This document shows positions 24,524 to 45,537 of a stretch of DNA of 64,000 nucleotides, piece after piece. This stretch comes from Malacoraja senta. Taxonomy: Eukaryota. Positions within the stretch are counted from its first letter, which is position 1, and the number at the start of each line of letters is the position of its first letter. The notes beneath the pieces are model-generated. The model was not told the DNA's origin, did no database searches, and saw nothing but the letters and a program-made list of their open reading frames with translations. The translations under genes were made by a program, and so were the position numbers. The stretch is taken from positions 41,354,001 through 41,418,000 of the forward strand of contig CM075984.1 of assembly GCA_038087875.1 (NCBI GenBank), in the 5' to 3' direction.

Positions 24524-24736
24524 TCAACTTGCAGAGTTTCCAAATGTGTTTGTTTCTACTGCCAGGTTGGGGTCTGCATTTTCTGAAGGGTTTTGCCCTT
24601 CATTTGCAATGTTCGTGGCCTGAAAGCCAACATCGTGTCCTGGCTCATTCAGTCCACTAAACTCCAGATTATGGATTTCCATATCCAATGCTGACAAAAT
24701 GTTCTGTGATGCATTTTTCTCAGAGAAGATTCTATC
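24524..24736 (-). CDS. PER2: PER2 last exon 23 (DRIFSEKNASQNILSALDMEIHNLEFSG...NSAS*)
   Basis: ttaatttag acceptor, phase 0 matching exon 22, 70 codons then TGA; positional similarity to human ECVYCENKEKGNI...EEDIPSLGLSEV. Confidence 0.78.
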   Translation of the reverse strand, partial: DRIFSEKNASQNILSALDMEIHNLEFSGLNEPGHDVGFQATNIANEGQNPSENADPNLAVETNTFGNSAS

Positions 24737-25574
24737 CTAAATTAAGAAGAATTACAATCAAATATATACACGACAAATTCCACACCTTCCATAAAAACAA
24801 AATCATTAAGAGTACAAGCAGTGTCATATATTATTTCCATTTTATTCTTACCATTACATTCTAATTTTTATGAGTCATAAGGAACAATCCCAAAATTAGT
24901 TGTCATTTTTTTTAATTATAGCCAACATTAGCCTCAAAAGGAATCACAATAAAACTTGCTGATTCTAAGTCTATATTCAGTTAAAACATGAAAGCCAATT
25001 GTCCATGTTAACATTTGATTTGTGGAAACAAAGAACTGCAGCTGCTGGTTTACCAAGGAATGACAGAACATACTGGAGTTACTCAGTGGGTCAGGCAGCA
25101 CCCCTAGAGAACGTGGATAGGTGACATTTCAGTCTGAAAAAGAGTCCCGATCCGACCCGAAACATCGCTTATCCAGGATGCTGACCGGAGTCTAACCTTA
25201 ATAATTAATTTTCTTGTCTGCCAAAAAGTTGCAGACCCGGCGGCTATTTATTTTACCAATTGTACAATACTGAACTAAATGCTGCAGGAAAGCTGTGAAT
25301 GAAAAGATTCAACAGGCAGACAATTATGTGTAGGAGAGAACTGCAGATGCTGGTTTAAATCTAAGGTAGACACAAAATGCTGGAGTAACTCCGCAGGTCA
25401 GGCAGCATCTCTGGAGAGAAGGAATGGGTGACGTTAAGGGTCAAGACCCTTCTTCAGACAATTATAATGGTTGCTTTGTAAAGTCCAATGCTTATTGGAA
25501 GTTATCACAGCTTTATTTGATCATCTCCCTACTCCCCAATTATATATATGTGCACTAAATGCATTTTCCAATTA

Positions 25575-26775
25575 TTATTATTTTTTTAAAATTTTTATTT
25601 ATTAGAAGTACATTACATTACAACCACATACATTAGTACTCATCATTTATATCTTCTTACAATTAATGTACTCCATTTATTTTTTACAGTAGAAAAGGAA
25701 AAGATTGAAAGAAAGAAGAAAGTGAAGGAAAAAGTGAAAGTGTAGGAAATGTGACAACAAAAAAGGACGAAGACCCTATAAGAGCAAAATTAAAAACAAA
25801 AGAAAAAGAGTTAAGAAATAGACCCTAGGAAAGAAAGAGAGAGAGAGAAAGAGGAAAAAGAGAGAAACAGATATTTTTATGAGCATTACGTAAATGGGAC
25901 ATACCAACTCTTCAACTATCATCCCCCCTTACCTGATAATTCTATAAATGCAGACCACGTCAGGTGGAAGTGATCTGGTTTACCTGCTAGGAGGAGTCTT
26001 ATCTCTTCTAGGTGTAATGTTTCAAACATATTTGAAATCCACATATTTATAGTTGGTATTGGAGCCTTCTTCCAAAATTTTAGAATTAGCTTTTTTCCAA
26101 TTATTAACCCATAGTCCATTAGTTTCTTTTGAAACACATTTAGTTCTGGACCATCTTCCGTTATACCGAAGATAATCCATTCTGCTTTGGGTATCAGTCT
26201 TGTTTTAAATAACTTTGTAAAGATTTCAAAAATTTCATTCCAAAATTTTTGAATTTTTGTACAGAAAACGAATGAGTGTGCTATAGTAGCTTCTTGGGAT
26301 TGACATTTATCACAAATAGATGATACATTTGGGAAAATTTTATGAATTTTAGTTTTTGAATAATATAATCTATGTAAAATTTTAAATTGTATTAAAGTGT
26401 GTCTTACATTAATCGAGCATTTATGCACGTTTAATATGTATTCATTCCAACTTTCCTTTGAAATTTTAATAGCTAACTCTTGTTCCCAGTCTCTTCTGAT
26501 ACCCTCCGTAGGTGGTATTTGTACATTTAAGATAATATTATACAAATATGATATTAAGTTTGCTGATTCCGCTTTTATCTGCATTGCCTCGTCCAATACA
26601 TCTACTGGGTTATTATCTTTTGTATTTTTTTCAAATAGTCGCATATTTGAAAATATTTAAAATATTGATTATTTCCGAGTTTATATTTTATTTGTAATTG
26701 TTGAAATGAAAGTAATTTTCCAGTTTCATACAAGTTTTCCAATTTTTCGAATTTTTATTTTGTTAATAAACAATT
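25575..26775 (-). mobile_element. L1/Tx1-type LINE 3' fragment (ORF2 C-terminus, 3'UTR, A-rich tail) in the last PER2 intron, sense to PER2
   Basis: ORF 25919-26644 has the zf-RVT signature IQFKILHRLYYS..CDKC..ATIAHSFVFC..FW; AATAAA and A-run on the minus strand at about 25581-25603. Confidence 0.85.
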
Positions 26776-27745
26776 ACATTAAATTGAGAGCCCAGTCCAC
26801 TCATGACAAAATTCCTAGTCCACATTTATTATTACCATTTAGTTTTCTTCAGTGATGTGTCACAAGGGGACAGGTCAAATTTGTCTTGGTATAAAAAGGT
26901 GTTTAGTTTTACTTGCATACCTATATGCTATAATAAATTATATAATAAATATAGAATGCTATAATAAATTCTGCACACTTTAAATTTTATGGCATTTCAA
27001 ACAAGAAGTTGGGAATTGATCCCAACTTGCTTTTAATGGGTGATTCACAAAGAGCACTGCAAAGTCTCGGATTCTTAAAATAACAGCTTGAGGATATTTA
27101 AATACAAAACAGATCAGAGTGCTGTCAGTTTTATTGCTCTTGCAGAGCAGGCTTGTTGTATTTTCTTTATGGATGAACCCCCCCCCCCCCCCCCCATCAC
27201 AATGGTAAATGTTGCACGCTGGTTTGGTTCAAATCTATGTTCAGACACTTCAGTTGAAATATTCATACTGTGGGCGATTTTTACTGCTTCATGGGTGTCA
27301 CATAAGCAGACCCAAACACAAATGTCGTGTTTGTAAGGAGGGTCTCAACCCGTAATGTCACCCATTCCTTCTCTCCAGAGATGCTGCCTAACCCGCTGAG
27401 TTACTCCAGCATTTTGTGTCTATCTTCGTATTTGTGAGTGTTCTACAATTTGTGTGGAACAAGACAATTTGTGTGTTTTACAAATGTGTGGGAGTAAATT
27501 AAAATGTTGGTGCAACGCGATTTAGGCAGCATCTAGAACTAATATTTTAGGCTATGAATCATTCATCACAACTTTTAAGAAGAGAGCTATTAGACCTTAA
27601 AGTGCAGAAGGGGAGAGGTGTGAAGCTTAAGGCAGAGAGGAGAGACTACGCACAATCGATCTGTGTTTGTGAAGCATCAAGACCTAAATTCTTGATAAAA
27701 CAACATTGACCTGAAACATAAAGCACAAATTTCTCTCTCCACAAG

Positions 27746-28026
27746 GGGCAGCACAATGGCGCAACGGCAGAACTGCTGCCTTACAGCGCCAGGGACTCAG
27801 GTTCGATCCCGACATCGGGTGCTATCTGTAAGAAGTTTGTAAGTTCTACCTGCGACCGTGTGATTTTTTTTTGCACATTCCAAGGCCGTGCTGGTTTGTA
27901 GGTTAATTGGCTTCTCCAAAATTGTCCCTATGTGTGTAGGATAGATCTAGTGTATGGGTGATCATTGGTCGGCACGGACTCGGTGGGACAAAGGGCCTGT
28001 TTCCACGGTGCATCTCTAAACTAAAC
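27746..28026 (+). mobile_element. HE1-like SINE
   Basis: tRNA head GGTTCGATCCC and CTCTAAACTAAAC tail. Confidence 0.8.
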
Positions 28027-28874
28027 TCTTAAGTTGAGTTTCCACAAATTTCTCTTTTTGCTCAGATTTCCAGCATTCATTCACACTGCACCACTTTTCC
28101 AAAAGTTTGGAAATGTTCAAATATATAAAACATTTTTCATGCTTTATATCACTCAAATAATTAGTTTCTACGATTGATGCATTTTACTTCATTTGGAATT
28201 TATTTGGAAGGAGGTAGGGGATATACATTAAATCCTGCCATTATTATTATGGGAAATTGCCTCAGTTTCAGAGTATGTGCTCCTATAAAAACTGTAGAAC
28301 CACCTGCTTAAGAAGCTTTTCATTTCTGAAATTTAATCCACGTCTGAGTGCAAATGAAGTATTATATTAAAACTTGGATAATATTAAAACTTGGGACAAT
28401 AATATAAATTGAGCGATTAGATCACAACTCAAATTGTCAAACAGAGTTCATACAGTTGAGAAAGCTAAAAAGGGGGTTCTGAAGAAGGGTCTCGACCCAA
28501 AACGTCCCCCTTTCCTTCTCTCCACAGATGCTGCCAGTCCCACGGAGTTACTCCAGCATTTTATGTCTATCTTAAACATAAAATAAGTTTGGAAACAACA
28601 ATACTCAATTGCAAAACATGGCCTTTAATTTAACCCCATTGTTGGCAGTCCAACACAGGGCAGACAAAGGCTGGTTTGTAGCAGAGCTATTAAAAATTCC
28701 CATGGTGCAGTCAATGATGTTCAAGAAATAGGATTTGCAATATATTGTTGAGCCATACAAGCAGCAGCTTTATCAGGTAATATGGAATGCATGTGATAAA
28801 AATGGGTGCAGATTTTATCATGAAAATATAATTCATTTCTCCTGCCAAGTTCAGGAAGTTAAAAATGGACTTAC

Positions 28875-29016
28875 CATGATGCCAATGGTTTTTTGTGCTG
28901 CACCCGTTTTAAAGACCTCAGCAATTTCTTTTCTTTGTTTCTCTGTGAATTTGGGTTGGTTTCTCTGCAACACTTTCAGCTTTACCCTGTCCTCCTTCAA
29001 AACTGTTACAATGTCC
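28875..29016 (-). CDS. PER2: PER2 exon 22, CRY-binding coiled region (RDIVTVLKEDRVKLKVLQRNQPKFTEKQRKEIAEVFKTGAAQKTIGIM)
   Basis: aatcag acceptor, gtaagt donor, 142 nt; VLKEDR..L..LQ..QP.FTE.Q..E Period_C motif. Confidence 0.93.
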
Positions 29017-31171
29017 CTGATTTGTAAGAAAGAAAGGCATGCTGATTATACTGCACTGGGAGATAATAAATATTATAAAAAAAACATCAGCAATACATGT
29101 GCTTGACATATGAATCTCAGCCATCTCTCTACAAAATGATTGGTATCAAGGTAAGGCAAAGTCACTCAGAACTAGAATTTCACTGCACAATCCATGCATG
29201 GTGGTTAATGCATTTTTCATTTTAATGACCGTGTAACCCATTTAAAACAATCAGTTAATGCTCCAGATAAAGTGAAGAATAAACCTGAAGAGAATTGGAA
29301 GCAGACGAACACATTAAATGTTCAAATACTGGAATCACACTTAAGCACATCTTAAATTCAGGATTGTTGCTTAGGGTTAGGAATCAGTTTAAGTCAAAAG
29401 GTTGAGGGTGATGGGTAATTAGAACTAGCGGCAAGCTAAAAGATGGGCACCAGAGCTTTGAGCAGCCCAGTTTAAAAAGAGTCGAGGGAAATGCTGTCCT
29501 GATGACATAGGAAAAGTTAATTTGTATGAGCGTTTCAGTAGCAGATGGACTGCTACTCGAGTAACGTAAAGAGTTGGAAACAGGAAGCCCACTGATGGCA
29601 CAGAGATACAAGGTCTCAGGATCAAATTCCAGATAAAATTGACCTTTTATGCAGCAGTGTTTCTATTTCATGGGCCAAAGACTGGGTTATTAACTTTAAT
29701 GGTTAATGTTGGCTGAAAAGTAGTGCAGAAATCAGACATACAGCTACAGTACATATAATTTATTATGAAATAGATAGTGCAGAATGATTCTCTTGTCTTT
29801 AGATTTCAGAGGGCTATGAATTATTTAATGTTATGCTGGATCTTTGTATTATCTGAAACCCAAAGATCAGATTACAGGTCTTGCAATTAGATTATTACCT
29901 TGTAAATACAATTGGGCATCTTTTACTCTTCGGACAAAATTGGACTCGGAGATTAAATTATTTAATCACTGCCAGGATTAGAAATCCCGTAAGGTCCCCC
30001 GACAGAATAGTGTTACTGACGCAAACCTTGAACCTTAAAATAATTAGTTGATCTCACCCAGGGCAAAGGCTGAAGCACCACAAACATGGAGAGGTCCTCG
30101 AGGGCAATGAAGTAGAACTTTCAAAATAGCTCAGAGATACATCCACTAATTGTCATTTGGTGAACTTGGCCTTGAGTGTGCATGTGGGATGAAAACTAGA
30201 CTCGACTTAGATTGGATGTCCTCCATGGTTGAACAAACTACCAGCCACCTACCAGCTAAACCACATGCCAGTGTGTAATAAGTTAATGTAATAAGAGAAC
30301 TGCTAGCAATCGAGGAGACGTACTACAGAAAGGAAAAGCACCTTCACCACAAGGGGAAAAGTGGAGATTGAATTAAAAATTCTATTGAAGTGCAACTCTG
30401 ATAACCTGCCATCTAATTCCTGGATTCACCAACATCATTGCTCACCAGGCCCAGACTCCCATGCTCTCTTTACTTTCAGATTCCCAATTCCCTTTTAAAA
30501 CTCACAGGGTTCACTGGAAAAATTATGCCACTATGTGACATCCAAAACAAGTGAAGTGTTTTGAGGTAATAATGAGAGTGATATCCAAAAGAAAAATCTC
30601 AATCTAGCACCAAGTTCCAACTGTGCTGTATTAACAAAGTTTTATTGTATTCGAAGCACTGCCCAGAAAACATGAACCAAGGCCATACTATAAATACGTT
30701 CTTTCTGGTCAGTGCAATTCCAATTCTCATACCCTCAAAATGAATACTTTTGAGTATTCTCCCTGTAGGTTTTCCCTGCATTAAACTAAACTTCTTGTTC
30801 TTCTTTCCTTTCTGCAGCCACGACTTTGTTGAACATGGGCCTTGGCGGGTCAGATGGCATCATTGATTGTCTGCCTGCCTATTATTGTATGGGCTTTACT
30901 TTTATTTCTGTGGAGTCAACAGGAATAGAAAGTGAGCTAACCATGTGGGACTAGCCCAGAAGCAAGCGATAACTGAAAACTCTCTCCATACAAATGATAT
31001 AAATATTTCTGCCAGTGGCTACCAATTGCTTCCCACCATGTCCTAGGATACACTTGGTCTGGTCCCGGGGATTTTTCTTCTTTTGTATGTATTAACACCA
31101 CAGGCACCTTCTCTTCTGTAATGCAGATCTCTCGAAGAGATCATTACTAACCTCTCTAGCATCTTTCCACC

Positions 31172-31893
31172 AGGGGCGCCAGGGCGATGGCTGCCCTGCC
31201 GGCAGTCTGTTCGTTTTTCCATTCTTTTTGTTATTTTTTAGTGTTTAAAGTTTGTTTGAATGTTCTTCGGTTTGTTTTATGTGGGGGAGGGGGGAGGGGA
31301 TCGGGTGATTTTTTTTTTCAAGTTCCTACCTTGCCGGAGATGTGGTTAATTTTCAGATCACATTCTCTGGCGTGTTCTGTGGCCTTCCATCGCTGGAGCT
31401 GGAAGCCTCCTCGGACTGTGAGCCCCACCGCAGGGCGCGGACTTAACATCGGAGCTGATCCCTTGCCTGGGATCGCTCCCACCGCAGACTTTACCATCAA
31501 GAGCTTGCAGTCGGGAGAGGCTGGTCGGGAGCTCCAACGTCACAGAAGGTTCGACCAACCCCGACGCGAAGTTCGATCGCCCAGCGCGGGGGAGCTGACA
31601 CCCCCCCCAATGCAGGAGCTGATCGCCTCGACGCAGAGGGCCCGAACGCCGCCGGCTACGGGAGTCAAGATCGTCCCGTCAACGGGGGCTCGAGGCCCAA
31701 GACCGAGGAAGAACTAAGGGAAGGGACTTGTATTTCGCCAATGAGGAATGTGTAGGAGTCACTGTGGTGGATGTTCATGTTAAAATGTGTTTTTGAGTGA
31801 TCTGTTGCTTTTAAGTGTATGACTGACCTGGCCAATGAAATTCCTCGTATGTTGCAAAACATACTTGGCGAATAAAGTGTGATTCTGATTCTA
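31172..31893 (+). mobile_element. Unclassified interspersed repeat with GC-rich body and AATAAA/(TGATTC)n tail; related copy at about 54510-55345
   Basis: Shared 5' GGGGCGCC..TGGCTGC, T-rich tract, TTATGTGG..GGGGG..GGGG and GC-rich body in both copies. Confidence 0.5.
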
Positions 31894-32079
31894 TGTCTTT
31901 CTACATTGTGAAGCCAAACAGCAAATATTCATTGAACACCTCACCCATTTCTTTGGTTCGATGCGTACATGACCTTATTGATCTTTAACCTCTCCCTAGG
32001 TACTCTTTCGCCTTAAGACAGAACAATATGGAGAGCCTTTGAAGTTGGAGTCAACACAATTGGGATTTTGGGCACTTAC

Positions 32080-32179
32080 CTGAATGGTAGTTGATAGGTC
32101 ATCATGGTTCTCGCGTCTATTTTTTCATTGTCAGAGTCGTTGCTTCCAAAATATTTGCTGCTGCTCAAGCAGCTACTAC
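32080..32179 (-). CDS. PER2: PER2 exon 21, shortened (GSSCLSSSKYFGSNDSDNEKIDARTMMTYQLPFR)
   Basis: attag acceptor, gtaagt donor, 100 nt with phases 1 and 2 correct; SKYFGS and MMTYQLP Period motifs. Confidence 0.92.
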
Positions 32180-32504
32180 CTAATCATGACAAACAAAGAA
32201 AAACAAAGGCAAGATAAGCATCTATTGCCTCCCCCAAATTGATCTGGAGAATTAGGCTCTCCACCTTTCACTTTATTTGGCTCTCCACTTGAGCCACCTT
32301 CTGGAACTGTTGCAGTCCTTCTGGTTTGGTTTATTTTGGAGATACAGCATGTTCACAGGCCCTTTGGCCCGAGTCCATGCCAAGCATTGATCACCCGTAC
32401 ATACTAGTTGCACGGTATTCCACTTCCCCATCCACTCCCTACATATTAGCTGCAAGTTTACAAAGGCCAGTTAACGTACAAGCCCACATGTCTTTGGTGA
32501 ATAT

Positions 32505-33228
32505 CAGGGTTTGTACACTTGGAACAGCTTTAAATTCGAGGACTTTAAGGACTTAAGGTCCAAAAATCCAATCTTCAAGGACCAAAATCCAGCAAACATT
32601 GATGGTTTATTGGAGACTTTTATATAAATTGCTTCGTATTGGATGATTTGATTCTGTACCAAATAAAAGTAAGAAAGAAGGTTGGTTGGTCTCCATCTCA
32701 AATTTGATTGAAAATCATGTTTTGCACACCTCTGGTACAAAAAGCACAGCAGAAAAATCAACTTTCAATTCAAAGTTCCTTCGAAGTCATGAATATAGCT
32801 CGAATTATTGCCAAATGCCTATTGGAATTTGGAGTTGAGACCTTGTTTTCTGTTGTGTTACTTGTGTGCTCTGATGTACAGACACTGATTTTCAGGGAAA
32901 TCTGAGAAGGTGATCAGTCAATCCATTAGTCCTGGTTGCAGAGAACGACACTAAACTACATAATAATTACACACAAGATGGTTAACCTATCTATATTCGT
33001 ACTTCAATAGAGCACTGATGGTCCATTTACTCATCTCTTGGTTGTTCAATCTGAAACCATAATGGAAAACTTTGTTTTTCAACGAGTCCCTGCAAACCTG
33101 TACTGTCCCTGCCTGCTTCAAAGTCTCCACTATTTCAATGACTTTCAAGGACCCATGATAAATCCAAGGACTTAAGGCCTTGAAAACAGATTCAAATTCC
33201 AGGACTTTCAAGGACCATACGAGCCTTG
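32505..33228. mobile_element. Degenerate non-autonomous DNA transposon (hAT-like ends) with subterminal AGGACTT(T/C)AAGG repeats
   Basis: CAGGGTTTGTAC at the left end, decayed ATACGAGCCTTG at the right end, repeated subterminal motifs at both ends. Confidence 0.4.
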
Positions 33229-33529
33229 GAAAATGCTTTGCCATCTCCAACCATTGCCAGAGTGTTGCCATGGTCGGAGATGTATTCTATTAAACAGGTT
33301 AACTCCTTCCAGAGCAATAGATGGTCTGATCTAATGTGCTGTTTATTTATTTTTGTCACCCAACCCCAAGCAAAAGCAACCCATCAGTTAACTTACACAA
33401 GCTCTTAAGCAAAGAAAACCATGGGCGACATGGATCTTTTGTTTAAAAAAAAAGAATAGATCCACTGATAATTCAGACAGTTGTTAGTGTTACATTATGG
33501 GTTAGGTTAAGACAAAAGGACAAAGTTAC

Positions 33530-33704
33530 CTGTGTCAGTTCCGGACATTCCACAACCATTGGACGGAGAGCCCGAGGAGCCGGACCTTGTCGATTCCATA
33601 CTCCCCGAGCCGGCAGAGCCGACGTCTGACTGCAATAACAGCTTCAGCATGTCAGTAGAAGTGGAGTGAGAGTCACTGTTCTGGGCTTCAGTAGGGGATT
33701 CATT
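33530..33704 (-). CDS. PER2: PER2 exon 20 (NESPTEAQNSDSHSTSTDMLKLLLQSDVGSAGSGS...)
   Basis: ctaaag acceptor, gtaact donor, 175 nt; QNSD..STS..LLxLLL and SG-rich tract. Confidence 0.92.
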
Positions 33705-34731
33705 CTTTAGAGAGCAAAAAAAAACCATACAATATGTTCACACCAGACAGGCAATATATTATTAATTAAAATGTCAAATTGCTGCATAGTGAATTAAAAG
33801 AATAAAAGAATTGCTACAGACATTTTGGACATGGTATACAGCACATGGCGTTACTGAGTAATGGGGTATCAGTCTTGTGTATCGTCAGGATAATGTAGGC
33901 TAACAATACTGTCTAGGAGACAATACGATGGACCACAAGTTAATGGCAAATGTCTAAACATTGTTGCTTATTCATCTTCTCACCATGAAAAAACAAAGTA
34001 CGGGGAAGGGGGGGGTTGGAGGAAGTGAATTAAAAAGGGTGCAACATATGCAATTTAAAAATAACGCAGGAAATTATAATGGAGAAGTATGGATGACATT
34101 TTTTTTTAAATGGGTCAATTTTAAATCCTTGTCCCATTTAAGAGTTTTTCCAGACACAATGTTTTCTCCCCACTTTATTCTGGGACAAAGAGCTTTAGAG
34201 ACTGGGCAATTGGCATCATGCGCCATTGCAGTCGATTGCTGACAGCCAGGGGATCAGTTGGTGTGAGTGGCATGGAAGTGTCAGGTCTATAGATTAGTGG
34301 TTGAATGTAGAGTCGTTGGAAGATGGCAATGGGGGATGGGTGCTAGAATTGAGGGAGTGAATTGGATCGGGAACAGGTAGGGGAGGGAATGAAAGGGTTA
34401 CAATGAAGGAGTGGGCAAGTTCAAATCTGTTTCCAGAACAGGACCTCACAGATTGGGAGTGGTCCCCTTGGCTAATGCTGAAGACCTCAGGAGTACGATG
34501 AATATCTTCTTCTAAACAAGCGCTCACATCTATGGGTGAGCAGGCGCACATCAAAATCCCCCTAGTAGAAGTGGCAGCCAGGCACAATTCATGCACAAAT
34601 GTATCAGATGCAGGGAGGGCCCAGAAGGAAAGCTCAGAGACTTTATTCTATTTACACTGTCCTCAATTTTCTCGATTTATTTTTCTCAGAAATTTAATCC
34701 AATTATTGTTTATAATTTGTACGCCACTTAC

Positions 34732-35426
34732 AAGATCTGCTTCGTCCTTTGCAATGGTGCCCACATTTGTACCGTTCATGTTGCTTGTCATTACTCTTCG
34801 GTCCGCCATTAATTCATTTCCAGCTACAAGTCCAATTGCTTTCGTAGATCCGGGCCCCACATCCAGAAGGTTCAGCTGCAAAGGTGAAATGGACCTAGAA
34901 TGGAAATTTGGAGGGGAAGTGTGGCCTTGTTGCCCTTGACTCCCTGGTGCAGGCTGGTCACGATACTGCGGTGCAAAGGCTGGCGGAGCCTTGAATAAAT
35001 TCCATGCAGGTAAAAAGTTTGGTTGCGAAGGGAATGGCGGCTTACTTGCAAAAATTGGCTGGTGCGCCGTCTCGGGTCCCGGAGACATGATGTAATTGGG
35101 CAACACAACTGCCACCAGCGGGGATACGAGTGGCGCGGAAAATGGTGGAGTCTGAGGATTGTAATGAAGAGCCTGAGCAGCAAAGTTGGCCAGAGATGGG
35201 TCAGCTGCAAAAGGCATGCCTCCAGGGGTTGGAAACATCGGCAGCTGGTAGGTAGGTATGAGTGCAGTAATTGGTGCGGGCCAAGGGTGGAGTCTATGAT
35301 TGGTTCTTCCGCTTGCCGCGCCATCAGATGATCCTTGCTGCTTGATGCGCTTCGTTTTAGGCTTCCTATTCTTCCCGCTTTTTTTGTGCCCGGGCTCTCC
35401 ACGGTTCCACGCAAATCCTCGAGAGG
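34732..35426 (-). CDS. PER2: PER2 exon 19: NLS (KKSGKNRKPKTKRIK), proline-rich region, SRSISPLQLNLL
   Basis: tttgtag acceptor, gtaagt donor, 695 nt, phase 1 to 0. Confidence 0.93.
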
Positions 35427-35869
35427 CTACAAAGGAAACAAATGGGACTTGTAAGTATTTGCTTCTAACCTTATTCTGGACATTTTTATATTGAAAGGTT
35501 GATGAAAGGAGTGACATAGATATTGGTCCCACAACTCCTGAAATTAACTGTTTAAAATTGAAGCTCAAACAAAGATTCTCCACAATTCAAACTTATTTTA
35601 GCAATCAGAGACAAGACATTGGCAGATCGTCCAAGAAGCAGTTTATAAAAGTTCCATGAAGGCAACTGGAATGACTATAACAGGCAAGGCTACATGAGAA
35701 TTTAACAAAACAAAAACAAAAACCATAGGATAATATGCTAAATTTAGCCCGAAATGAAACATGGTACATTGATCCTCAATTGCCTCTTCTCGTAGATAAT
35801 ATACAGCAACACATTTTGTATGCTTACAAGTAAAATTAATTTAAAAACCCCTTATTTGTAAAATCTTAC

Positions 35870-36136
35870 CACGATCCCTTGAATATTCTTTGTGCCGATA
35901 TTGCAAAGAGGATTTGCAAGTAGCTCCAAATGGTTTTAGTTTACTCAACTCCTTGAACTTGCTCAAAAATATCTGCTCTTCTTTCTGTGTATGAGCAGCT
36001 AGAACTTCTTTGGTGAGACCGAGTTTCTTGAATGCTTCCTTTTCCAGGTTCACAGAAGATGCTGTGGTGACCAGCGTAGCAGATGTCATGTTCTCTGCTG
36101 GATCTGCAATGCCAAGTCCATCCTCCAATAGGATTT
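35870..36136 (-). CDS. PER2: PER2 exon 18 with CK1-binding motif B (FKKLGLTKEVLAAHTQKEEQIFL)
   Basis: gacag acceptor, gtaaga donor, 267 nt. Confidence 0.96.
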
Positions 36137-37209
36137 CTGTCAAGATTTTAAGTTTAAAATTGTATGCGTAAGAGGGTGTTTTTTCTGCATGAAGGCAAGT
36201 GCATCAACTATAATGGCATAATAACTCCCCTAATGAGCAAGTGCTCCAGTTGGTCAGGCATGAGTTTGACCGTGGTAGCATTGCTGGAATTAGCAACCAC
36301 ACATCTGGGCATAGGAGTGGGGAAACAAATACACGTGTTGCGTGTACACACATAAGTAGCATTCAGAAACATTGTGGTATAGCCTGTGGAGCTAATATTG
36401 TTTCTTCAGAAGGGCACCTCAATTGGGAAATACAAATTACTTATGCCTCAAGAACTTACATTTTTTTAACCATAAATCACACTAAATAGCCATCACAGGG
36501 CTAAAATCACAGTAAGTTCTGTTCATTCACCATCTCGGTGCCTGATAATCTACATTGGAACCTGGCTCGCTAATAGTTCAAATTTAAAACTTTAGTTCTT
36601 CCACACAGTCTTTTCCACCTCTGTAGTCTCCTCTGGCATATTTTCCATAGTAATCCATGCTCCTCTAATTTTGGTGCTTCATTGCTCCATGTTGGAAGAC
36701 CATGTGTTCAGCTGCCAAGGCCCTAACCCATGGAACTAAAACTCTCCACCTCCATTCCAGTTTCCTAACTTAACATGTTCACAACATCTAGAAACAAGGA
36801 GCTGCAAATGCTGGTTTATACACAAAAGGACACAAAGTGCTGGAGTAACTCAGCATGTCTGCCTGACCTGCCGAGTTACTCCAGCACTCTGTGTCCTTCA
36901 CAAACTCTACCTTTTAGACAAAGCTTCTGAGCTATGGCCCTACCATCTCTTTATGTGGCCTACAATTAATGACATTTTAATCCTGTGAGATACTGCAAAA
37001 TGATTTTGCTACGTCAAGTGTGCTAAAAAAAAAAGTTGTGGGTGCTGTGAAATTATTAAATATCGCATTTATTGGTCACTAAAAATCAATATTCTTCTCC
37101 TTCCATGCTCAGGTCAGGACATTGAAGCTTCACAGAAATGCTTGCAGTGCGTGTATTAACCAACTTGCACCTCCTCTTGAGAGATCTTTTAGAACGTGAA
37201 TTTCAGTAC

Positions 37210-37368
37210 CTGCATCTGCCTGCGGTTTCTTGTCTCCCACATGAACAATGGTGCTGCTGTAACTTCCTCGACTGGTGACGCTCGCTGCCTTCCTTCGCAA
37301 GGCGCGTGGTGCCAGAAGTGTGCCAACAACTGCTCCAGAAGGCATCTTCTTTGCAGACTTTAATGGAG
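37210..37368 (-). CDS. PER2: PER2 exon 17, FASP region (ALRRKAASVTSRGSYSSTIVHVGDKKPQ)
   Basis: cttgtag acceptor, gtactg donor, 159 nt; SYSSTIVHVGDKKPQ is PER2-like. Confidence 0.95.
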
Positions 37369-37849
37369 CTACAAGGAAAGCAATTCCGCAGGTCAAATAC
37401 TCGCATTTATACTTTATCTCCGATGGATGACTTTGTGAAACATACCGAATTTGGCTTTCGATAAACACTCAGTGGTTACTAAATGACTAAGATATGTTGG
37501 GCAAAAAAATATATATATATATACAAAACTAAATAATGGAAATATTTAATAAATCAGGCAGCATTCTTGGAGATAGAAACAGAGTTAATTTTTCAGATCT
37601 TGATCAGAACTGGAATAATAATTGTTTCTTTCTTCAGAGATGCTGCGTGACATTCTGTGACCTCCAACATTTTGTTTCTAGCATCTGGGTTTGTTTTTAA
37701 AGCAATAAAGATAGGCTAATAAGCCTCAGAAACCTCATGGCACCATACAGATTAAATCTTTGAATCAAGTCAGACGTTCCGTACATTCTGTAGCTTGGTA
37801 GGTAATTTGAAACAAAACTAAACACCTCAATTTCAGACTTGGTAAATAC

Positions 37850-37956
37850 CTTTACAATCATTCACGATATCAACTTTTCGTTTGTCGTCATCCGATGGCG
37901 ATGAAGAACCACACTTCCGTTTTGTAGTCCACGGAATATTGTAGCTATCCAGATAT
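37850..37956 (-). CDS. PER2: PER2 exon 16 (RYLDSYNIPWTTKRKCGSSSPSDDDKRKV...)
   Basis: tttgcag acceptor, gtattt donor, 107 nt; RYLxS..KRKC motif. Confidence 0.9.
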
Positions 37957-38587
37957 CTGCAAAAATACCAAAGTAACAAAAATCAACGAGGTAACAGAAA
38001 AGAGAGAAACAGACTCATTCGACATATTATTTAATCATTTTTCTCTCAACTTTAAAGCAGTATTCTGGTGTATCTAAAAAGGGCACAAGACAAAAGTGTG
38101 TATGTGCGTTTTAAACAGTGATGAAGCAAATATTTTCTGATCTTACAAGTCAAAAGGGTCAATGTGGCTCAATGGTGCCGTCTCGCCCGACTCAGCAGGC
38201 CATCAGGCTAACTTCTGAACATAGTTGATGCTTCAGTGTGGCATTGAAAGTGTGCCACACTGTCGAACGTGACTTGTTTCAGGTAAAGCAATAAACCTTG
38301 GATGTAAAAGATGCCGTGCATTTTTTACACTGAAATAGCAGAGGATATCCAAATCTATATACCTGCCACCTTCACATGAGCAAAAGGATTGATACATTTG
38401 CCGAAAAGTCAACTACCATGATTCAAAGGAGGCTCAATATGTGTATGTTTCAACTTTTACGTCGCATGCTACAATATTTAAGCTGATTAAAACTTGTGTT
38501 TTATTTTAAACTTTCTTGTTTGAGCTCTGGGTACTCAGCCTGCTGGTTGCCATTACTATTGCTGAGCCCAAGATTTCTACTGGAGCT

Positions 38588-38845
38588 GGTTTTAGTTTTA
38601 AGATGCAGCACGGCAACAGGCCCTTCGGGCCACCGAGTCCAAACTGACCAGTGATCACTCATACCCTCGTTCTATCCTGCACACAAGGGGGGGAATTTAC
38701 AGAAGCCAATTAATCTGCAAACTCGCACGTCTTTGGAATGTGGGAGGAAACCGGAGCACCCGGAGAGAACCCATGTCGTGTCAGGCAGAACGTCCAAACT
38801 CCATGCAGACGGTACCCAAGGTCAGGATCGATCCAGGTCACTGGG
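38588..38845 (-). mobile_element. Diverged HE1-like SINE
   Basis: V-domain GTCTTTGGAATGTGGGAGGAAACCGGAGCACCCGGAG on the plus strand. Confidence 0.7.
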
Positions 38846-39042
38846 GCTGGCTGGTGTCAGTTAGCAACCTATGTTAGGAAAGATGAAATGTACTTCACAG
38901 AGATCCAAGTATCTCTGTGGCTGCTTTCTTAAAGGCCATTCATGAGAGTTGTCACTTCACAACTGATGATAAAATCCAGGTCAACAAATAAAGCCTTGTA
39001 GTTTTGGTAAATACATTTGTTCAGGTCCAGAATGCCACTCAC

Positions 39043-39208
39043 CTTATTACACTATCCAGACAATTGATTTGCTGATAGCAATATCCAGCATGTTCCTCAC
39101 ATCTTGGTTCATCCACGAGCATGTTCTTTCCAGCACTACTTGTTCCAGTACCCTTGGATGGGCTGGCTTTAACATCTTTAGTCTGTTTACTTGTCTCTTT
39201 TTGTGTTC
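39043..39208 (-). CDS. PER2: PER2 exon 15 with CK1-binding motif A (YQQINCLDSVIR)
   Basis: tttgcag acceptor, gtgagt donor, 166 nt. Confidence 0.93.
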
Positions 39209-39702
39209 CTGCAAAATATATGCCCTTCTACAATGAGAACAATGCGTAAAATTCTGAAGTAAGGAGAGATCAAGTCTTTTGTTAGTTTTCCCTTAATTTA
39301 AAAAAAAAACAGGTCATATTTATTTAAATTGGCTTTTCAAATACTTCAGTCAAAATGAAGCTAGATGTATTATAGCCAGACTCCCTTCGTCTTATTCTTA
39401 TCTGGTTCTCAAAAATGGTAGGAACTGAATATTGAAAAAGTATACATATTCAAGTAAAATTGTAGTCCCAAAGTATTTAAAGGCAAATAGCAACATGTTT
39501 ACATTGTTCCTTACATTGATGTTTTCTATGTAAATCCAAATGACTACATCAGGTCCATATTCACAGAATAAGAGTGAATGAAACAAGCACAGCTGTAATG
39601 GCAAATGTCATTCTTGGACTCATGGTGCTTTTCACTCAGAATTTGTTTAAATCATTTACGTATATGCCTAGATAATGACTGCAAAATAATTAAGTCTATT
39701 AC

Positions 39703-39805
39703 CAGTTCTGTGTCTGCACTTTGATTCACTCTTTATTTTGTTGAATTCTGTCTGTCCTCGAATTCTTCCTGTGTGGGGATCTTTACCAGCTTTCCAAACC
39801 ACCAT
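39703..39805 (-). CDS. PER2: PER2 exon 14, poorly conserved linker (MVVWKAGKDPHTGRIRGQTEFNKIKSESKCRHRT)
   Basis: ctttctttcag acceptor, gtaata donor, 103 nt; supplies the needed phase 0 to 1 bridge. Confidence 0.75.
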
Positions 39806-40180
39806 CTGAAAGAAAGAGACAAGGGACTAAAGGTTAATGATTTCCTCCCAAAATTAATGACTGCTCAAGAGCAGACTCTGCTTTTGAGTCACAAAAAAAC
39901 TAGATAGTGAATTCAGGATGTACTAGGCCAACTGCTGAATGAACTAATGATGGCAGAAAATTGTTAAAGCAGTATTTTCAACTGCATTCAAAGAGTAAAT
40001 GAAAATATTATTAACTCCAGTGCTCCATTTTCTATATGGGAGCTGACAAACTTGTTTCGGTGGTATCATTAGAGTCTCAAAGCCAAATGTTCTCAAAACC
40101 AAGTGCCACCCTTTAACGTAATCTAAAACAACATTTCCATACATTAGTAAGGGAGAGCTTCACAGTCAAAAGACACCTTC

Positions 40181-40225
40181 CCATGGGCATTTAAATTGAG
40201 CCCATCTCAATTTAAATGCCCATGG
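40181..40225. repeat. Perfect 20-bp inverted repeat with 5-nt loop
   Basis: CCATGGGCATTTAAATTGAG-CCCAT-CTCAATTTAAATGCCCATGG. Confidence 0.95.
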
Positions 40226-41052
40226 AAAGGCAAAACTATGTCTCTTGGCAAACGATTCCTTGCATTTTTCAAAGAATAACACAGGTGCCCAGCCATTTTT
40301 TGGCTCAGTCAACATCACTAAACTAGATTATTTCCATATGTTTCTCACTGCCACTTTTGTGCAAAGCTAACTGCTATCTTCTCCTACAATACACTTTTCC
40401 TGCAATACATCACGTTAAAAATAATTTAATTGATTTCAAAGTAATTCGGAATATCTGGAGATCACCAAAAGGCGCTATACAAATGCAAATCCTTTAGAGA
40501 GTCACTATGACTCACGATCAGACATCTTTGTAATTCTTAAGAGTTTTACAAAGAGCAAATATTTATTTGTCTACAAAGCTATATTCATTTAATTGGCTCT
40601 TTCTACTTGTTTTAAGAGCAACAATTTCAGGCTTATCGATGGACAACATCACCTACATGTTATTGTCTGATTATAAGCATTAATTAATAATCATTAAAGA
40701 TCAATAAAGAAATAAATGTAATTCCTACTGAACAAATACGAAATGAATACAAAGCCCCACGATACTGCAGTTTGGAGAATTGAAATTACAAATTTAAGGA
40801 CCGTATATCCTAACTAAACTAAAATAGAGACCCATAAAATCTGGGATACAGAATAAAAATTACTCTAACGAGATTTATATGCAATAAAAATAAACGCACA
40901 ATTTTTTTTCAACTTGCATTTCTGATGTCTGCGTAGATGCAGCCTCGCATTAAGCTGCGATACCAAACATTTCTAGGAGCATAACCCCTGATTTATGCAT
41001 GATAATCAACATATTTGTTTGCATGAATTAGCTTGTGGAAGAGATGACTTAC

Positions 41053-41184
41053 AGGTTTGTGCAGTTGTCTCTCTTCATTGATGTTGCCATTAGTATCAAT
41101 GGAAGAGGCAACACTGATGATCTGTGCATGGGATCTACTACTGACCAAACTTCCATACCCACTGGAACGATTATTGTAAACAGG
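41053..41184 (-). CDS. PER2: PER2 exon 13 with beta-TrCP phosphodegron SSGYGS (41149-41166)
   Basis: ttttag acceptor, gtaagt donor, 132 nt; PVYNNRSSGYGSLVSSRSH. Confidence 0.94.
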
Positions 41185-41287
41185 CTAAAATAAGAAAGCA
41201 TAACTGTCTTAATAGAATTTAAAGCACTGAATTAGACACAAATTGCATTTAAATCTGAAAACACTCATCAATGTGAATTAGTTTTAC

Positions 41288-41396
41288 CTGCAGCAAGAGC
41301 TGTTGAATCTGCTCAGTGATGGTCTGTATTTCAGGATGAAATGCCTTCAATTCACTACAGCCCGGAGCAGCAAACACATCTTCATTCAAAGGACCT
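41288..41396 (-). CDS. PER2: PER2 exon 12 (GPLNEDVFAA...ITEQIQQLLLQ, NES)
   Basis: atgtag acceptor, gtaaaa donor, 109 nt. Confidence 0.95.
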
Positions 41397-41902
41397 CTAC
41401 ATATCAGAAGTTGAAGGGGAGATACAAGACTGAGTACCCATTTTACATCTGTCATCATTTAATATATGTGATTATGAATATGTACAATTTCAAAGATTAT
41501 GTTGCTATGGCCCATTATTTGACAGGCAAATATTCATAATAATAGTTCCAATTTTGTTTTTTGAATACTAGGGCAGTAACTGCAGTCAGATCGACTGGAT
41601 TCACAAAATAATCACTTCATAATTTCAGTCCCTATCATCACCCTGATTAATTAAAAGTATTTAAAATAATTCATAATTTTAGGATACATTTTTTTCCTCT
41701 ACATTAACACCCTTAGTTCTGCACATCCTTGCTACATCTTTTTTCTTTAAACAATCCCTGTTCACCTCTCAGTTAAAAATGATATTAAAAAGACACTGAA
41801 ATAATACCACAACATCAAATCAGTAACTGCTAGATACAATTCTAATTTGTTGCAAAATGTCTAAATTGATCAATCTTCATGATAATAATCCAAAGCACTT
41901 AC

Positions 41903-42056
41903 CTTCGGACTTTGTGTCTTCCGATAATGAAGGATACTTTTCTGCTCCAGGGATTGACAAAACTGGACCAACTGGTGTCAATTGTGATGTATTCACCACT
42001 TTGTGTGCAGAAACGGACTGGTGAATGTTCAAAAGGTTGCCCAGCATTTTTCAGTA
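41903..42056 (-). CDS. PER2: PER2 exon 11, PAS-B/PAC ([30 protein letters not shown])
   Basis: ctttcag acceptor, gtaagt donor, 154 nt; dimerisation Trp of PWSRK is intact. Confidence 0.97.
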
Positions 42057-42230
42057 CTGAAAGAATAAAAAATAATCAAGTAGCAGTTATCTATGTCTGA
42101 AGAAAGTTCCCAATCTGAAACATCACCCATCCTTTTTCTCTAGAGATGTTACCCGACCCACTGTTATCCATGCTGGAAAAAATGACCATCAGATAATAAT
42201 AATAATTAAATATTGCATCTACAAACTTAC

Positions 42231-42337
42231 TTTTTTTATGAATGCTTAGCATGAGAGGTTGATCATCAGGGTGTAGATGCATCATTACAGGCATTCCTAT
42301 GAGATCCTGAGGCAAATAACCTAATAGAGGAACAGCC
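42231..42337 (-). CDS. PER2: PER2 exon 10, PAS-B ([36 protein letters not shown])
   Basis: tcacag acceptor, gtaagt donor, 107 nt. Confidence 0.97.
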
Positions 42338-42680
42338 CTGTGAAAGAAAATGGAATGATTCAATAATTTGCACAATGCAATTTACAATAAGATATTAAAA
42401 ACGCATTGAGTCAAATACAAGGCTGTTTTAAAAATAAAGTTAAACAAAAAAAAACAGAACTATTACCCAAAACGTACTAACTGAAGCATTTAACTGAATT
42501 TAGGTAAATATCATTTGCCCTGTAGGGGGTGAAACCTAGCTTTTAAAACAATTTTGTTCATGTTTCAAGAATGGTAATTTTATTTGGAATTTAATTTTAC
42601 ACAAGGTTTAATACAATTTAGATTAAAAACAAATTGTTTCTTTCCGCCATTGCTGCGAAAATACTTAGTTCTCCACATAC

Positions 42681-42759
42681 CTCTCTTCAATGTCCTGAAA
42701 CACACAGCTGGGTGAGTGAGTGGTGGTAAACACCCTCTTATCATGGGGAATCTTTGGCG
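42681..42759 (-). CDS. PER2: PER2 exon 9 (APKIPHDKRVFTTTHSPSCVFQDIEE)
   Basis: tatcag acceptor, gtatgt donor, 79 nt. Confidence 0.95.
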
Positions 42760-43487
42760 CTGATAAAACATAAAACAAAATGAAACAATTTTAAAAATGT
42801 GCTGTCTAATCAAATTTTCCCTTTTAATCGGTTAAATTAGCCTTGGATCTTTCCAATGGCATCTATTAAGTTAAAAACTTCAAAGCATAATGCTCAGTCT
42901 GCTAATTCTCACACTCAATGTAGTCAACTACAAACGGTGTGCTATGCTTTGAACCAGGTCATACAGCTTCTTAGAATTTCAATATATTAATAACTATCAA
43001 TTTGGTTTTACATATAAATGCACAAGAACTGCAAATGCTGGTTATTACACAAAAGTACACAAAGTGCTGGAGCAACTCGGCAGGTCAGGTAGCATCTCTG
43101 GAGAACATGGATAGTTGACTTTTCGGGAGAAGGGTCTCAACCCAGGACGTCACCTTTCCATGTTCTCCACAGATGCTGCCTGACCTGCCGAGTTGCTCCA
43201 GTACTTTGTGTACGTTAGCTTCTAACAAATATCGTACTCTGAAGAGTACATGCAGTCAGCCTGGCATTAGGGGGCTGTCCAGGCTGCCTTTAAATTAAAA
43301 ATAAGTTCTAATCACTCATTATCTGACTCGTTCTTCCAGTTTTCCAGCTAGCCAGAAAAAATTGGTTGAATTTGGTTGAAGGATGTTACATCATTTAATA
43401 ACAAATATGATTTTGCAGATTTGGGGTGAGGAGAAAACACAATGAGTGTTTCCTTGCGAAAGATAATTTTGTTGATCATAATCTCAC

Positions 43488-43630
43488 CTTCATATCCCGA
43501 ATGCACCCTTTCAGCAAGCATCAGGCAGCATAGTTGGTCATCGTCATCATCAGATGCCCGAACCTTTGTAAGATAAGGCGTCACATGAAACGGATAGTAA
43601 TGGGTGCTCCGATCTCGCTGTTGGTTTCCA
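43488..43630 (-). CDS. PER2: PER2 exon 8, end of PAS-A (YYPFHVTPYLTKV...LCCLMLAERVHSGYE)
   Basis: tcacag acceptor, gtgaga donor, 143 nt. Confidence 0.96.
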
Positions 43631-45207
43631 CTGTGAAATGGATGGTGACAGTAAAGTTCAGAGTCAGACCAAAAATAGTGAAAACAGGTGACTTGCTCCA
43701 GCAGTGCACAACTGAAAGGGCACTGGCACGGCATGAAATTATGGCAACAAACAGTTTCACATCACTCTGGTTATTCCACCAGGTTCTTTCTGGTGTGTTA
43801 TGAGTTTTGCATCAGATGAACCCAAGGGGTGACAATTCACATGAAATGTTCTTTTCGGGGATTGTGAAGGAAATTAGCCCACATTGTCCTGACAGTGACC
43901 AACATGTTTTTACCCGACTGAAACACCATTAAGGTAATTGCAAAAGTTACCATTGGCCTTCAGACCCACAAACCTCTCAGTACAATCTAATCCTCTCCCG
44001 CGCCCAACCCATCAATATCACATATTGAAGATTGGCTCAGGCACCAACTCTCTGCTCACTTGGCAGTCCGATCCCCAAATCTCCACCCAGATTTCCTTCC
44101 TCTACCAACTACTGACCCTCCAATTTCCAACACTCCTTCTTGAGTCTAGTTCTATGACGACTGATCTCTGAATCTACTCCATACTCCTTCTCCAATTAGA
44201 CTCTCTATACTGACCACTGATCATTCATTCACACTAGTTCTCCATTACCCTACTTTGTCATTCACTCCCTACACACTAGCGGCAATTTACAGAGGCCATT
44301 TAACCTATGAACCCGCATGTTTTGGGGCTATGGGAGAAATCCAAAGGTTCAGGTACACTGAAAAGCGCAGAGTCTTAGGCAACAGTCAAGCAGTCTGGAA
44401 GCAGATTTGAAAGTTGGGTTCAAGGTGTTAGATTAGGAGGATTAGCTGGCTCCTGATTGGTACTGCGGTGACAGGGGAGAATGACCAGGTCCAAGGATGG
44501 CAGATGAGGAATGTGAACTCAGCGCTTAAGTGCTCTTAAGGATCTTAGAGGAAAGTGGTGGGCTCCAAAGGATTAGAAGGAATTGAAGGAAATGGAGCTT
44601 TGCAAATTTGTGGTTTGGGCCTAGGGTGGCAGTAGTGATGGGAGAAGGTGTAGTTTGGGCACAAACAGAACTCAATGATGAAAGACAGGTATTGAGAAGC
44701 CCTAGGCCTGCTCAAGAGTGGCCACACACAGGACAATGTGGTCCACATTCACTTGAATTGCTTCCAAAGGATCAGTGCATTGGGAATTACATCAAGGACA
44801 CGACGGGCAAATCACTACCAGGGTTGCCTGGGCAAACATCTGGAGAAACTCAATGTTAATTGTGCATTTCACTCCAGGACAAATTGATTTCATATTGCAT
44901 GGTGCTGGAAAAACAGAATTATGCAATTGAACTTCTGGGTCGATATTTCTATCAATTTTTTAAAAAAGCTGTTTTTTTTGCACAACTTAATGGTTTGGGA
45001 TTTTCTCTGAAGTCTACAGAGCCAGTCATTTTCATAAAGTCCAATCCAGAGCTCCCAAGTACTAGCAAGTTCCTCACAGGTTATATGGGTGATGATCATC
45101 ATACAGATCAGGTCAATGCTCTTGTGTACAGGACCCAGTACCACGATCTTCCCCACACAACCCTTTCACTCGTTGGTTCATTCCTCTCCAACCTTTCCAG
45201 TACTCAC

Positions 45208-45259
45208 CTAATCCGACAGAAGAAGGACTTCTCCTGCATACAATCGAAAGGGGATGAAC
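45208..45259 (-). CDS. PER2: PER2 exon 7 (SSPFDCMQEKSFFCRI)
   Basis: ctttcag acceptor, gtgagt donor, 52 nt. Confidence 0.93.
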
Positions 45260-45537
45260 CTGAAAGACAGCAACAGTAACAAGTTAAGCAATTGCACTTA
45301 ATGGAGATAGACAAAATCTAAGTATCTGCTCATACAGTTAAACACCACATTATTAATTAATGGAGTCTTTTGTGAAGACAAAAGTGTGCAAAAAGATCAA
45401 ATATGATGTTGTCATATTTGGTAACAGTTTTATCAAATGGTGTGATAATCTTCCTGGTATATTCTGCACGACTAAACAAGGTTCTGCCAAGTTTAGAAAT
45501 AACACATGGTTAATAATCTCTAAATGAGAGGGAAAAC

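What the first reader, a model, noticed from the sequence alone, without database searches (positions are those of the whole stretch)
24719..24736. Zinc-ligand CxxC replaced by RxxS at the start of the last exon
Seen: the final exon begins GAT AGA ATC TTC TCT GAG (D-R-I-F-S-E), in register with human E-C-V-Y-C-E. Downstream similarity (NI..DMEIHNLEFSGL versus NI..EEDIPSLGLSEV) supports the alignment. Established: these two cysteines (mouse C1210/C1213) form the intermolecular zinc site with CRY1. Both are substituted while their neighbours stay similar.
Basis: partly seen in the sequence, partly recalled or inferred. Interest (0 to 1): 0.8.

Follow-up and report, generated by a model that had tools for sequence, protein, structure and literature searches.

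The report
Skate PER2 lacks zinc-clasp cysteines
The only Period clock gene of this skate really lacks both cysteines that in mouse PER2 hold a zinc ion shared with cryptochrome, and the first has been missing in all cartilaginous fishes sampled, so a site described as strictly conserved in vertebrates is not.

Summary
On the minus strand, the last coding exon of an intact 22-exon PER2 gene begins GAT AGA ATC TTC TCT GAG (D-R-I-F-S-E) directly after a ttag acceptor. This is the position where bony vertebrates have E-C-x-x-C-E.

- **Splice:** a spliced transcript contig from a related skate joins 28875 to 24736 exactly.
- **Not an assembly error:** a second assembled copy of the locus, 99.67% identical, carries the same codons.
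- **No alternative exon:** no other exon encoding a PER-like CxxC exists in the intron or downstream.

The change is not private to this genome.
- The first cysteine is absent from all 17 chondrichthyan PER2 proteins examined: chimaera, sharks, rays and skates.
- The second survives in some lineages and was lost several times.
- All three skates have no cysteine at all in the motif.

The elasmobranch tail after the motif is conserved to the C-terminus, unlike the tail in bony vertebrates. The genome shows only one PER locus. Its CRY1-like gene keeps Cys414 and His473.

The most likely reading is an ancient loss of the PER half of the zinc clasp. PER2-CRY binding, if kept, would then be zinc-free. 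The binding itself was not tested.

The scan had already reached a matching reading on the other copy of this locus (s1-200016).

The parts
24719..24736 (-). Codons D-R-I-F-S-E at the position of the PER2 zinc-ligand motif E-C-x-x-C-E; R replaces the first Cys and S the second
24524..24736 (-). Last coding exon (exon 22): 70 codons plus a TGA stop, ending ...FGNSAS as in other elasmobranchs
24737..28874 (-). Last intron (gtaagt...atttag), 4138 bases, holding an L1-like ORF2 fragment and SINE-like repeats; it contains no PER-like exon
28875..29016 (-). Exon 21, the core helices of the CRY-binding domain (VLKEDRVKLKVLQRNQPKFTEKQRKEIAEV); it lacks the PWF tripeptide found in all relatives
32080..32179 (-). 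Exon 20, the start of the CRY-binding region; all three skates lack the QDPIWLL-type helix here
24524..59057 (-). Complete PER2 coding region: 22 exons, all AG/GT, open frame of 1236 aa

Best explanation
The window holds the PER2 gene of a skate (Rajiformes-like elasmobranch), apparently the only Period gene in this genome. It encodes D-R-I-F-S-E where bony vertebrates have E-C-x-x-C-E.

Shown:
- The PER half of the intermolecular Cys2-Cys-His zinc site is absent.
- The gene is intact and under purifying selection.
- The first cysteine is absent in every cartilaginous fish sampled.
- The second cysteine is lost in all skates and in several other lineages.
- This animal's CRY1-like gene still has Cys414 and His473.

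Inferred:
- The first cysteine was lost once, on the chondrichthyan stem, and later constraint on the second cysteine was relaxed.
- PER2 in skates can no longer share a zinc ion with CRY in the mammalian manner. Any PER2-CRY association must rest on the conserved helical core (VLKEDxxKLKxxQRNQPKFTExQxKE) alone.
- By analogy with mouse Per1/Per2 Cys-to-Ala knock-ins, the result would be weaker binding and faster PER turnover, not loss of rhythm.
- The elasmobranch-specific tail, conserved right to the C-terminus, may partly compensate.
For: - **Sequence and splice sites:**
- **Gene model:** intact, 22 exons, 1236 aa.
- **Transcript support:** contig L020 from run SRR5172149 (a related skate, about 95% nucleotide identity) aligns exon by exon and joins 28875 to 24736, reading DRIFPE.
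- **Second copy:** contig C2227, 99.67% identical, has the same codons.
- **No other exon:** no CxxC exon with PER similarity lies in 18000-28874, and only this exon matches PER tails.
- **Motif census:**
  - bony vertebrates: ECxxCE or ECxCCE
  - Callorhinchus: APFCCG
  - sharks: DLVCCE or DLVCWE
  - Pristis: DKIFCE; Mobula: DNIFCE
  - stingrays: DNIFGE; Narcine: DKIFFE
  - skates: DKIFSA, DRIFPE and DRIFSE (this window)
- **Selection:** dN/dS against the related skate is 0.34 overall and 0.45 in the last exon. The last exon has no window-specific change when Rhinoraja is used as outgroup.
- **Tail conservation:** 47-93% identity to the window within elasmobranchs, against 10-20% to bony vertebrates.
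- **CRY side:** the CRY1-like gene at C3:72.12 Mb keeps Cys412, Cys414 and His473 in mouse CRY1 numbering. The second CRY keeps the CYC and NH residues.
- **One PER locus:** six own-genome six-frame searches, three with PER2 exons, one with a PER1 PAS-region query and two with the Pfam models PF12114 and PF21353, hit only this locus and its duplicate.
- **Elephant shark:** listed with Per1=0, Per2=1, Per3=0 (PMC11457068 supplement).
- **Mouse CACA knock-ins:** still rhythmic, with shorter period, faster PER2 decay and residual CRY1 binding (PMC11645128).
Against: - There is no RNA from this species itself. The splice therefore rests on an ortholog's transcript and on canonical splice sites.
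- PER-CRY binding and zinc content were not measured or modelled here.
- The single-PER conclusion depends on a six-frame first-look search of one assembly with 6182 contigs. Paralogs in unassembled GC-rich regions cannot be excluded.
- Asp and Glu flank the motif and a conserved His lies 24 residues downstream, so a zinc site with other ligands cannot be ruled out from sequence.
Confidence: 0.85

Rival explanations
1. Skate PER2 no longer binds CRY at all. After losing the QDPIWLL helix and both cysteines, and in this species also PWF and several core residues, it acts on the clock independently of CRY.
For: All three skates lack the helix at the start of the CRY-binding domain and both cysteines. 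Exon 21 holds 6 of the 32 window-specific substitutions in only 47 sites, plus a 3-residue deletion at positions invariant elsewhere.
Against: The central helices whose combined mutation abolishes binding in mouse (Nangle et al.) are still recognisably conserved (E = 3e-9 to mouse PER2 CBD). dN/dS in exons 21 and 22 is below 1. Mouse PER2 without the cysteines still binds CRY1 detectably.
Confidence: 0.15
2. A zinc bridge to CRY persists with substitute PER ligands, such as the flanking Asp and Glu of D-R-I-F-S-E or the conserved His of EIHNLE.
For: The CRY side keeps Cys414 and His473. D and E flanking the motif are conserved in about 80% of elasmobranchs, and EIHNLE in nearly all.
Against: The CRY residues may be kept for other reasons. 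The four inner motif positions vary freely among elasmobranchs (L, K, N or R at the first; C, W, G, F, S or P at the fourth), as expected for relaxed positions. No tool result supports metal binding.
Confidence: 0.08
3. The true terminal exon encodes CxxC and was missed, or the RxxS reading is an assembly or sequencing error.
For: There is no direct RNA evidence from this species.
Against: Two assembled copies agree. The related skate's transcript uses this exact junction. Sixteen annotated chondrichthyan PER2 proteins use the homologous exon. No PER-like CxxC open frame lies in 18000-28874 on the minus strand, and tblastn with PER tails over the whole window on both strands gives no significant hit other than this exon.
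Confidence: 0.02

Closest known systems
Mammalian PER2 CRY-binding domain with the intermolecular CCCH zinc finger (mouse PER2 C1210/C1213 with CRY1 C414/H473 or CRY2 C432/H491; PDB 4CT0, 4U8H)
   Same: It is an orthologous gene with the same exon layout at the 3' end. The core CBD helices are conserved. The CRY partner keeps its two ligands.
   Different: Both PER-side cysteines are replaced (R and S). The N-terminal CBD helix (QDPIWLL) and the PW motif are also missing. The tail after the motif is conserved within elasmobranchs, whereas in bony vertebrates conservation ends at the CXXC.
Mouse Per1/Per2 C-to-A ('CACA') knock-in alleles (PMC11645128)
   Same: In both, the PER protein lacks its two zinc-coordinating cysteines while the rest is intact.
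   Different: The mouse alleles are engineered and recent. The skate state is natural, hundreds of millions of years old, sits in what appears to be the only PER gene, and comes with further CBD changes that may compensate or erode further.
PER2 of other cartilaginous fishes (Callorhinchus, sharks, rays)
   Same: All lack the first cysteine, and elasmobranchs share the conserved C-terminal tail ending FGNSAS.
   Different: Chimaera and squalomorph sharks keep an adjacent CC pair. Galeomorph sharks, Pristis and Mobula keep one cysteine. Skates, stingrays and Narcine keep none. This window additionally lacks PWF.

Membership tests
Vertebrate PER2 (Period family) | PAS-A and PAS-B/PAC domains | tested here: met
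   PF21353 matches window exons at 99 and 40.8 bits. The exons align at 90-97% identity to a skate PER2 that carries PF23170, PF21353, PF14598, PF08447 and PF12114.
Vertebrate PER2 (Period family) | Period_C / CRY-binding region | tested here: met
   PF12114 scores 40.6 and 32 bits, above the 25-bit cut-off, on exons at window 28908-29024 and 33528-33680. There is a PDB match to the PER2 CBD.
Vertebrate PER2 (Period family) | Orthology to PER2 rather than PER1 or PER3 | tested here: met
   The nearest proteins are all annotated PER2: rays, sharks, coelacanth and gar. No tree was built.
PER-CRY intermolecular CCCH zinc finger | Two cysteines in a CXXC motif at the end of the PER CRY-binding domain | tested here: not met
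   The motif is D-R-I-F-S-E, and there is no cysteine anywhere in the last two exons.
PER-CRY intermolecular CCCH zinc finger | CRY-side ligands Cys414 and His473 (mouse CRY1 numbering) | tested here: met
   Exons of the CRY1-like gene align to 4K0R/5T5X with C at position 414 and H at position 473.
PER-CRY intermolecular CCCH zinc finger | A zinc ion bound between the two proteins | not testable with these tools
   This needs metal analysis or a crystal structure of the skate complex.

The most novel reading that the evidence does not exclude
Cartilaginous fishes, which appear to have a single Period gene, run the vertebrate PER/CRY clock without the zinc clasp. In elasmobranchs a lineage-specific tail (EKNASQ...EIHNLELNGL...FGNSAS), conserved to the C-terminus, would have taken over as the clamp on CRY or on another partner. 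In skates the erosion of the CRY-binding domain may have gone far enough for PER2 to work largely uncoupled from CRY.
Probability: 0.25. Interest if true: 0.75.

Novelty: new variant of a known kind. Interest (0 to 1): 0.5.

Why it matters
The CXXC of PER1/PER2 was described as strictly conserved across vertebrates and as a possible zinc- or redox-sensing clasp on the PER-CRY repressor. Here a whole vertebrate class lacks the first ligand and several lineages lack both, in what appears to be their only PER gene. This is a natural counterpart of the mouse CACA knock-ins.

It lets three questions be tested in a living system: whether the clasp is dispensable, what compensates for it, and whether zinc or redox input to the clock arose or was kept only in bony vertebrates. 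It also warns against annotating clock function in sharks and rays from mammalian rules.

Tried and rejected
- **RNA evidence from this species.** Two run searches found no run recorded as RNA; the only full holders are the two runs of organism D, kind not recorded and probably the assembly's own DNA. I used a Logan transcript contig of a related skate instead.
- **PDB search with the last exon alone.** It found nothing, as expected for a tail that is not conserved with mammals.
- **Own-genome search with a full-length PER1.** It failed with a server error and worked when repeated with the PAS region.
- **C-G-I-C open frame at 24784.** It lies 48 bases upstream of the acceptor, is in another frame, stops after 8 codons and has no PER similarity. 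CxxC occurs 14 times by chance in this stretch. Rejected.
- **Pseudogene reading.** Rejected because the frame is intact, splice sites are canonical and dN/dS is 0.34.
- **Literature.** Searches found no report of this loss in cartilaginous fishes within the held library.

Full report
**What is in the sequence**

Read on the minus strand, bases 24736 to 24719 are GAT AGA ATC TTC TCT GAG (D-R-I-F-S-E). They follow a pyrimidine-rich tract and a ttag acceptor. The open frame continues for 70 codons to a TGA stop at 24526-24524. The preceding exon ends ...GGC ATC ATG, followed by gtaagt at 28875/28874, in phase 0.

**Which gene and which animal**

The exon before the last intron matches the CRY-binding domain of mouse and human PER2 in PDB entries 4U8H, 4CT0 and 6OF7 (E = 3e-9 to 5e-8). 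It also scores above the Pfam Period_C cut-off.

A search with the largest exon against 1.8 billion representative proteins gave 8 hits. The best is the PER2 cluster of rays, at 64% identity, followed by coelacanth PER2. Searches with ray and shark PER2 then returned PER2 from 16 further cartilaginous fishes. The nearest are two skates: Rhinoraja longicauda and an unnamed transcript from run SRR5172149. The window is therefore a skate-like elasmobranch PER2.

Guided by that transcript, I built a model of 22 coding exons (59057 to 24524, minus strand). Every intron is AG/GT and the frame is open for 1236 residues.

**Is the exon real and the splice right?**

Several indirect lines agree.

- Contig L020 is 4029 bases long and holds a 3717-base coding sequence, so it is a spliced transcript. 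It aligns to the window in blocks that end at my exon boundaries. It passes from window 28874/28875 straight to 24737/24736 and reads ...ATC ATG GAT AGG ATC TTC CCT GAG.
- A second assembled copy of the locus (contig C2227, 99.67% identical over 5.7 kb) has the same 18 bases.
- A scan of all three minus-strand frames from 28874 down to 18000 found 14 CxxC strings, none in an open frame resembling PER.
- tblastn with C-terminal tails of ten PER1 and PER2 proteins hit only the exon at 24736 with any significance (Pristis 1e-22, Heterodontus 3e-15, Falco 0.003).
- Alternative isoforms in Mobula, Pygocentrus and Anas diverge exactly one residue before the motif. That is what an intron at this conserved position would give.

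**Is the alignment to the zinc ligands right?**

In a 28-species alignment, the stretch from QPKFTE to the D-x-E-I-H-x-L-E motif has no gaps except the window's own 3-residue deletion. The six motif columns read as follows.

| Group | Motif |
|---|---|
| Tetrapods | E-C-(I/V)-(Y/F)-C-(E/G) |
| Coelacanth, gar, bowfin, bichir | E-C-x-C-C-(E/G) |
| Sturgeon, lungfish | (E/D)-C-x-C-S |
| Chimaera (Callorhinchus) | A-P-F-C-C-G |
| Heptranchias | T-L-V-C-C-E |
| Pristiophorus, Heterodontus | D-L-V-C-C-E |
| Galeomorph sharks | (D/E)-L-(V/A)-C-W-(E/K/G) |
| Pristis | D-K-I-F-C-E |
| Mobula | D-N-I-F-C-E |
| Two stingrays | D-N-I-F-G-E |
| Narcine | D-K-I-F-F-E |
| Skates | D-K-I-F-S-A, D-R-I-F-P-E, D-R-I-F-S-E (window) |

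The position of mouse C1210 is not cysteine in any of 17 cartilaginous fishes. The position of C1213 is cysteine in some and not in others. Nearly all exceptions are cartilaginous fishes, truncated isoforms, or proteins in which my search pattern did not find the anchor motif.

**Evolutionary reading (inference on the accepted phylogeny)**

PER1 and PER2 of bony vertebrates both carry the CXXC, so the common ancestor had it.

- One loss of the first cysteine on the chondrichthyan stem explains all 17 sequences.
- The second cysteine was then lost at least four times: in most galeomorph sharks, in skates, in Narcine and in stingrays. It survives in Pristis and Mobula.
- This repeated loss is the pattern expected once the site no longer worked as a pair.

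With Rhinoraja as outgroup, the window's last exon has no change of its own, and the serine is shared with Rhinoraja. R-x-x-S is therefore close to the ancestral skate state.

**Is the gene still constrained?**

Between the window and the related skate, dN/dS is 0.34 over the whole coding sequence and 0.45 in the last exon, which has 5 non-synonymous and 3 synonymous differences.

More telling, the tail after the motif is conserved across elasmobranchs right to the final FGNSAS (47-93% identity to the window). The same region is 10-20% identical to bony vertebrates. Nangle et al. state that in bony-vertebrate PER1/2 conservation ends at the CXXC. Within the motif, the flanking D and E are kept in about 80% of elasmobranchs, while the four inner positions vary. 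The exon is clearly functional, but constraint has moved off the former ligand positions and onto the tail.

**The partner and the paralogs**

The genome has two CRY1/2-type genes on contig C3.

- The CRY1-like gene aligns to mouse CRY1 (4K0R, 5T5X) with cysteines at 412 and 414 and histidine at 473.
- The second gene also keeps C-Y-C and N-H.

The CRY half-site therefore remains.

Six six-frame searches of the 1.94-Gb assembly hit only this locus and its duplicate contig. Three used PER2 exons, one used a PER1 PAS region, and two used the Pfam models PF12114 and PF21353. The same kind of search did pick up BMAL1 at 35% identity. A published survey lists the elephant shark with no Per1, one Per2 and no Per3 (PMC11457068 supplement). 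No cartilaginous-fish PER1 or PER3 appeared among the database hits. The caveat is that this is one assembly with 6182 contigs and the search uses a heuristic first pass.

**How it most likely works**

Shown: the PER side of the Cys2-Cys-His site is gone in skates.

Inferred: PER2 and CRY cannot share a zinc ion in the mammalian way. Any association must rely on the conserved helices encoded by exon 21.

In mouse, deleting or mutating the CXXC weakens CRY binding but does not abolish it. Knock-in mice with both cysteines changed in Per1 and Per2 show the following (PMC11645128):
- they stay rhythmic;
- the free-running period is about 0.7 h shorter;
- PER2 decays faster;
- peripheral clocks are damped;
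- endogenous PER2-CRY1 binding remains detectable.

By analogy, the skate protein would bind CRY more weakly or more transiently, unless the conserved tail or other changes compensate.

Skates also lack the QDPIWLL helix at the start of the domain. This species alone lacks PWF and has changed several otherwise invariant residues in exon 21: 6 of its 32 private substitutions fall in 47 sites. A fully CRY-uncoupled PER2 therefore cannot be dismissed. I give that reading about 15%.

**Comparison with what is known, and novelty**

The gene is a member of the PER2 family by domain content and nearest relatives. It fails the one defining feature of the PER-CRY zinc finger that can be read from sequence. 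Literature searches in the held library found no report of this loss in cartilaginous fishes. The structural paper calls the ligands strictly conserved across vertebrates. I class this as a new variant of a known kind.

An earlier follow-up of this scan, on the other assembled copy of the locus, reached the same stepwise-erosion reading (s1-200016). My results were obtained before I saw it, and they agree.

**Verdict**

The loss is real, old and shared. Its functional consequence is inferred, not measured. Interest is moderate, 0.5.

Noticed in passing
G000 contig C2227 (L013 = C2227:28800-34500) versus window 23400-29200: A 620-kb contig carries a second copy of the PER2 locus in the opposite orientation, 99.67% identical over 5.7 kb. 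It is most likely an unmerged haplotype, not a gene duplicate.
   Followed up: partly
window 32080-32179 (exon 20, minus strand): All three skates (window, SRR5172149 transcript, Rhinoraja) lack about 20 residues that hold the QDPIWLL-type helix at the start of the CRY-binding domain. Rays, sharks, chimaera and bony vertebrates keep it.
   Followed up: partly
window 28875-28925 (end of exon 21, minus strand): This genome alone lacks the PWF tripeptide (HPW in bony vertebrates). It also has E-to-V (twice), M-to-L, PP-to-AQ and D-to-G changes at positions conserved in all other species. Six of its 32 private substitutions lie in this 47-site exon.
   Followed up: partly
window 24527-24718 (minus strand) and the homologous tails of P0001, P0019-P0033: The tail after the former CxxC is conserved across elasmobranchs to the last residues (FGNSAS). 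It contains L/F-xxx-I-xx-L-x-(F/L), a pattern resembling a class 1a nuclear export signal. This is a pattern match only.
   Followed up: no
whole genome G000: Only one Period locus was found, with no PER1 or PER3. This matches a published count for the elephant shark (Per1=0, Per2=1, Per3=0).
   Followed up: partly
window 25922-26656 (minus strand), inside the last intron: There is a 245-codon open frame resembling the C-terminal part of a LINE-1 ORF2. SINE-like repeats that translate as ...FSPEMLPDPLSYSS... are scattered through the introns.
   Followed up: no
G000:C3:8311554-8314386 (L015, L018, L019): The second CRY gene is more divergent than the first (for example LDADF for LDADW and FLPCYC for FFHCYC). 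Its Pfam matches were flagged with stop codons inside, probably where the match runs into introns. Its integrity was not checked.
   Followed up: no
proteins P0113 (Acipenser) and P0118 (Protopterus): Sturgeon and lungfish PER2 read E-C-L-C-S and D-C-M-C-S. They keep the first and a middle cysteine but not the canonical second one, so the ligand pair may also differ among bony fishes.
   Followed up: no
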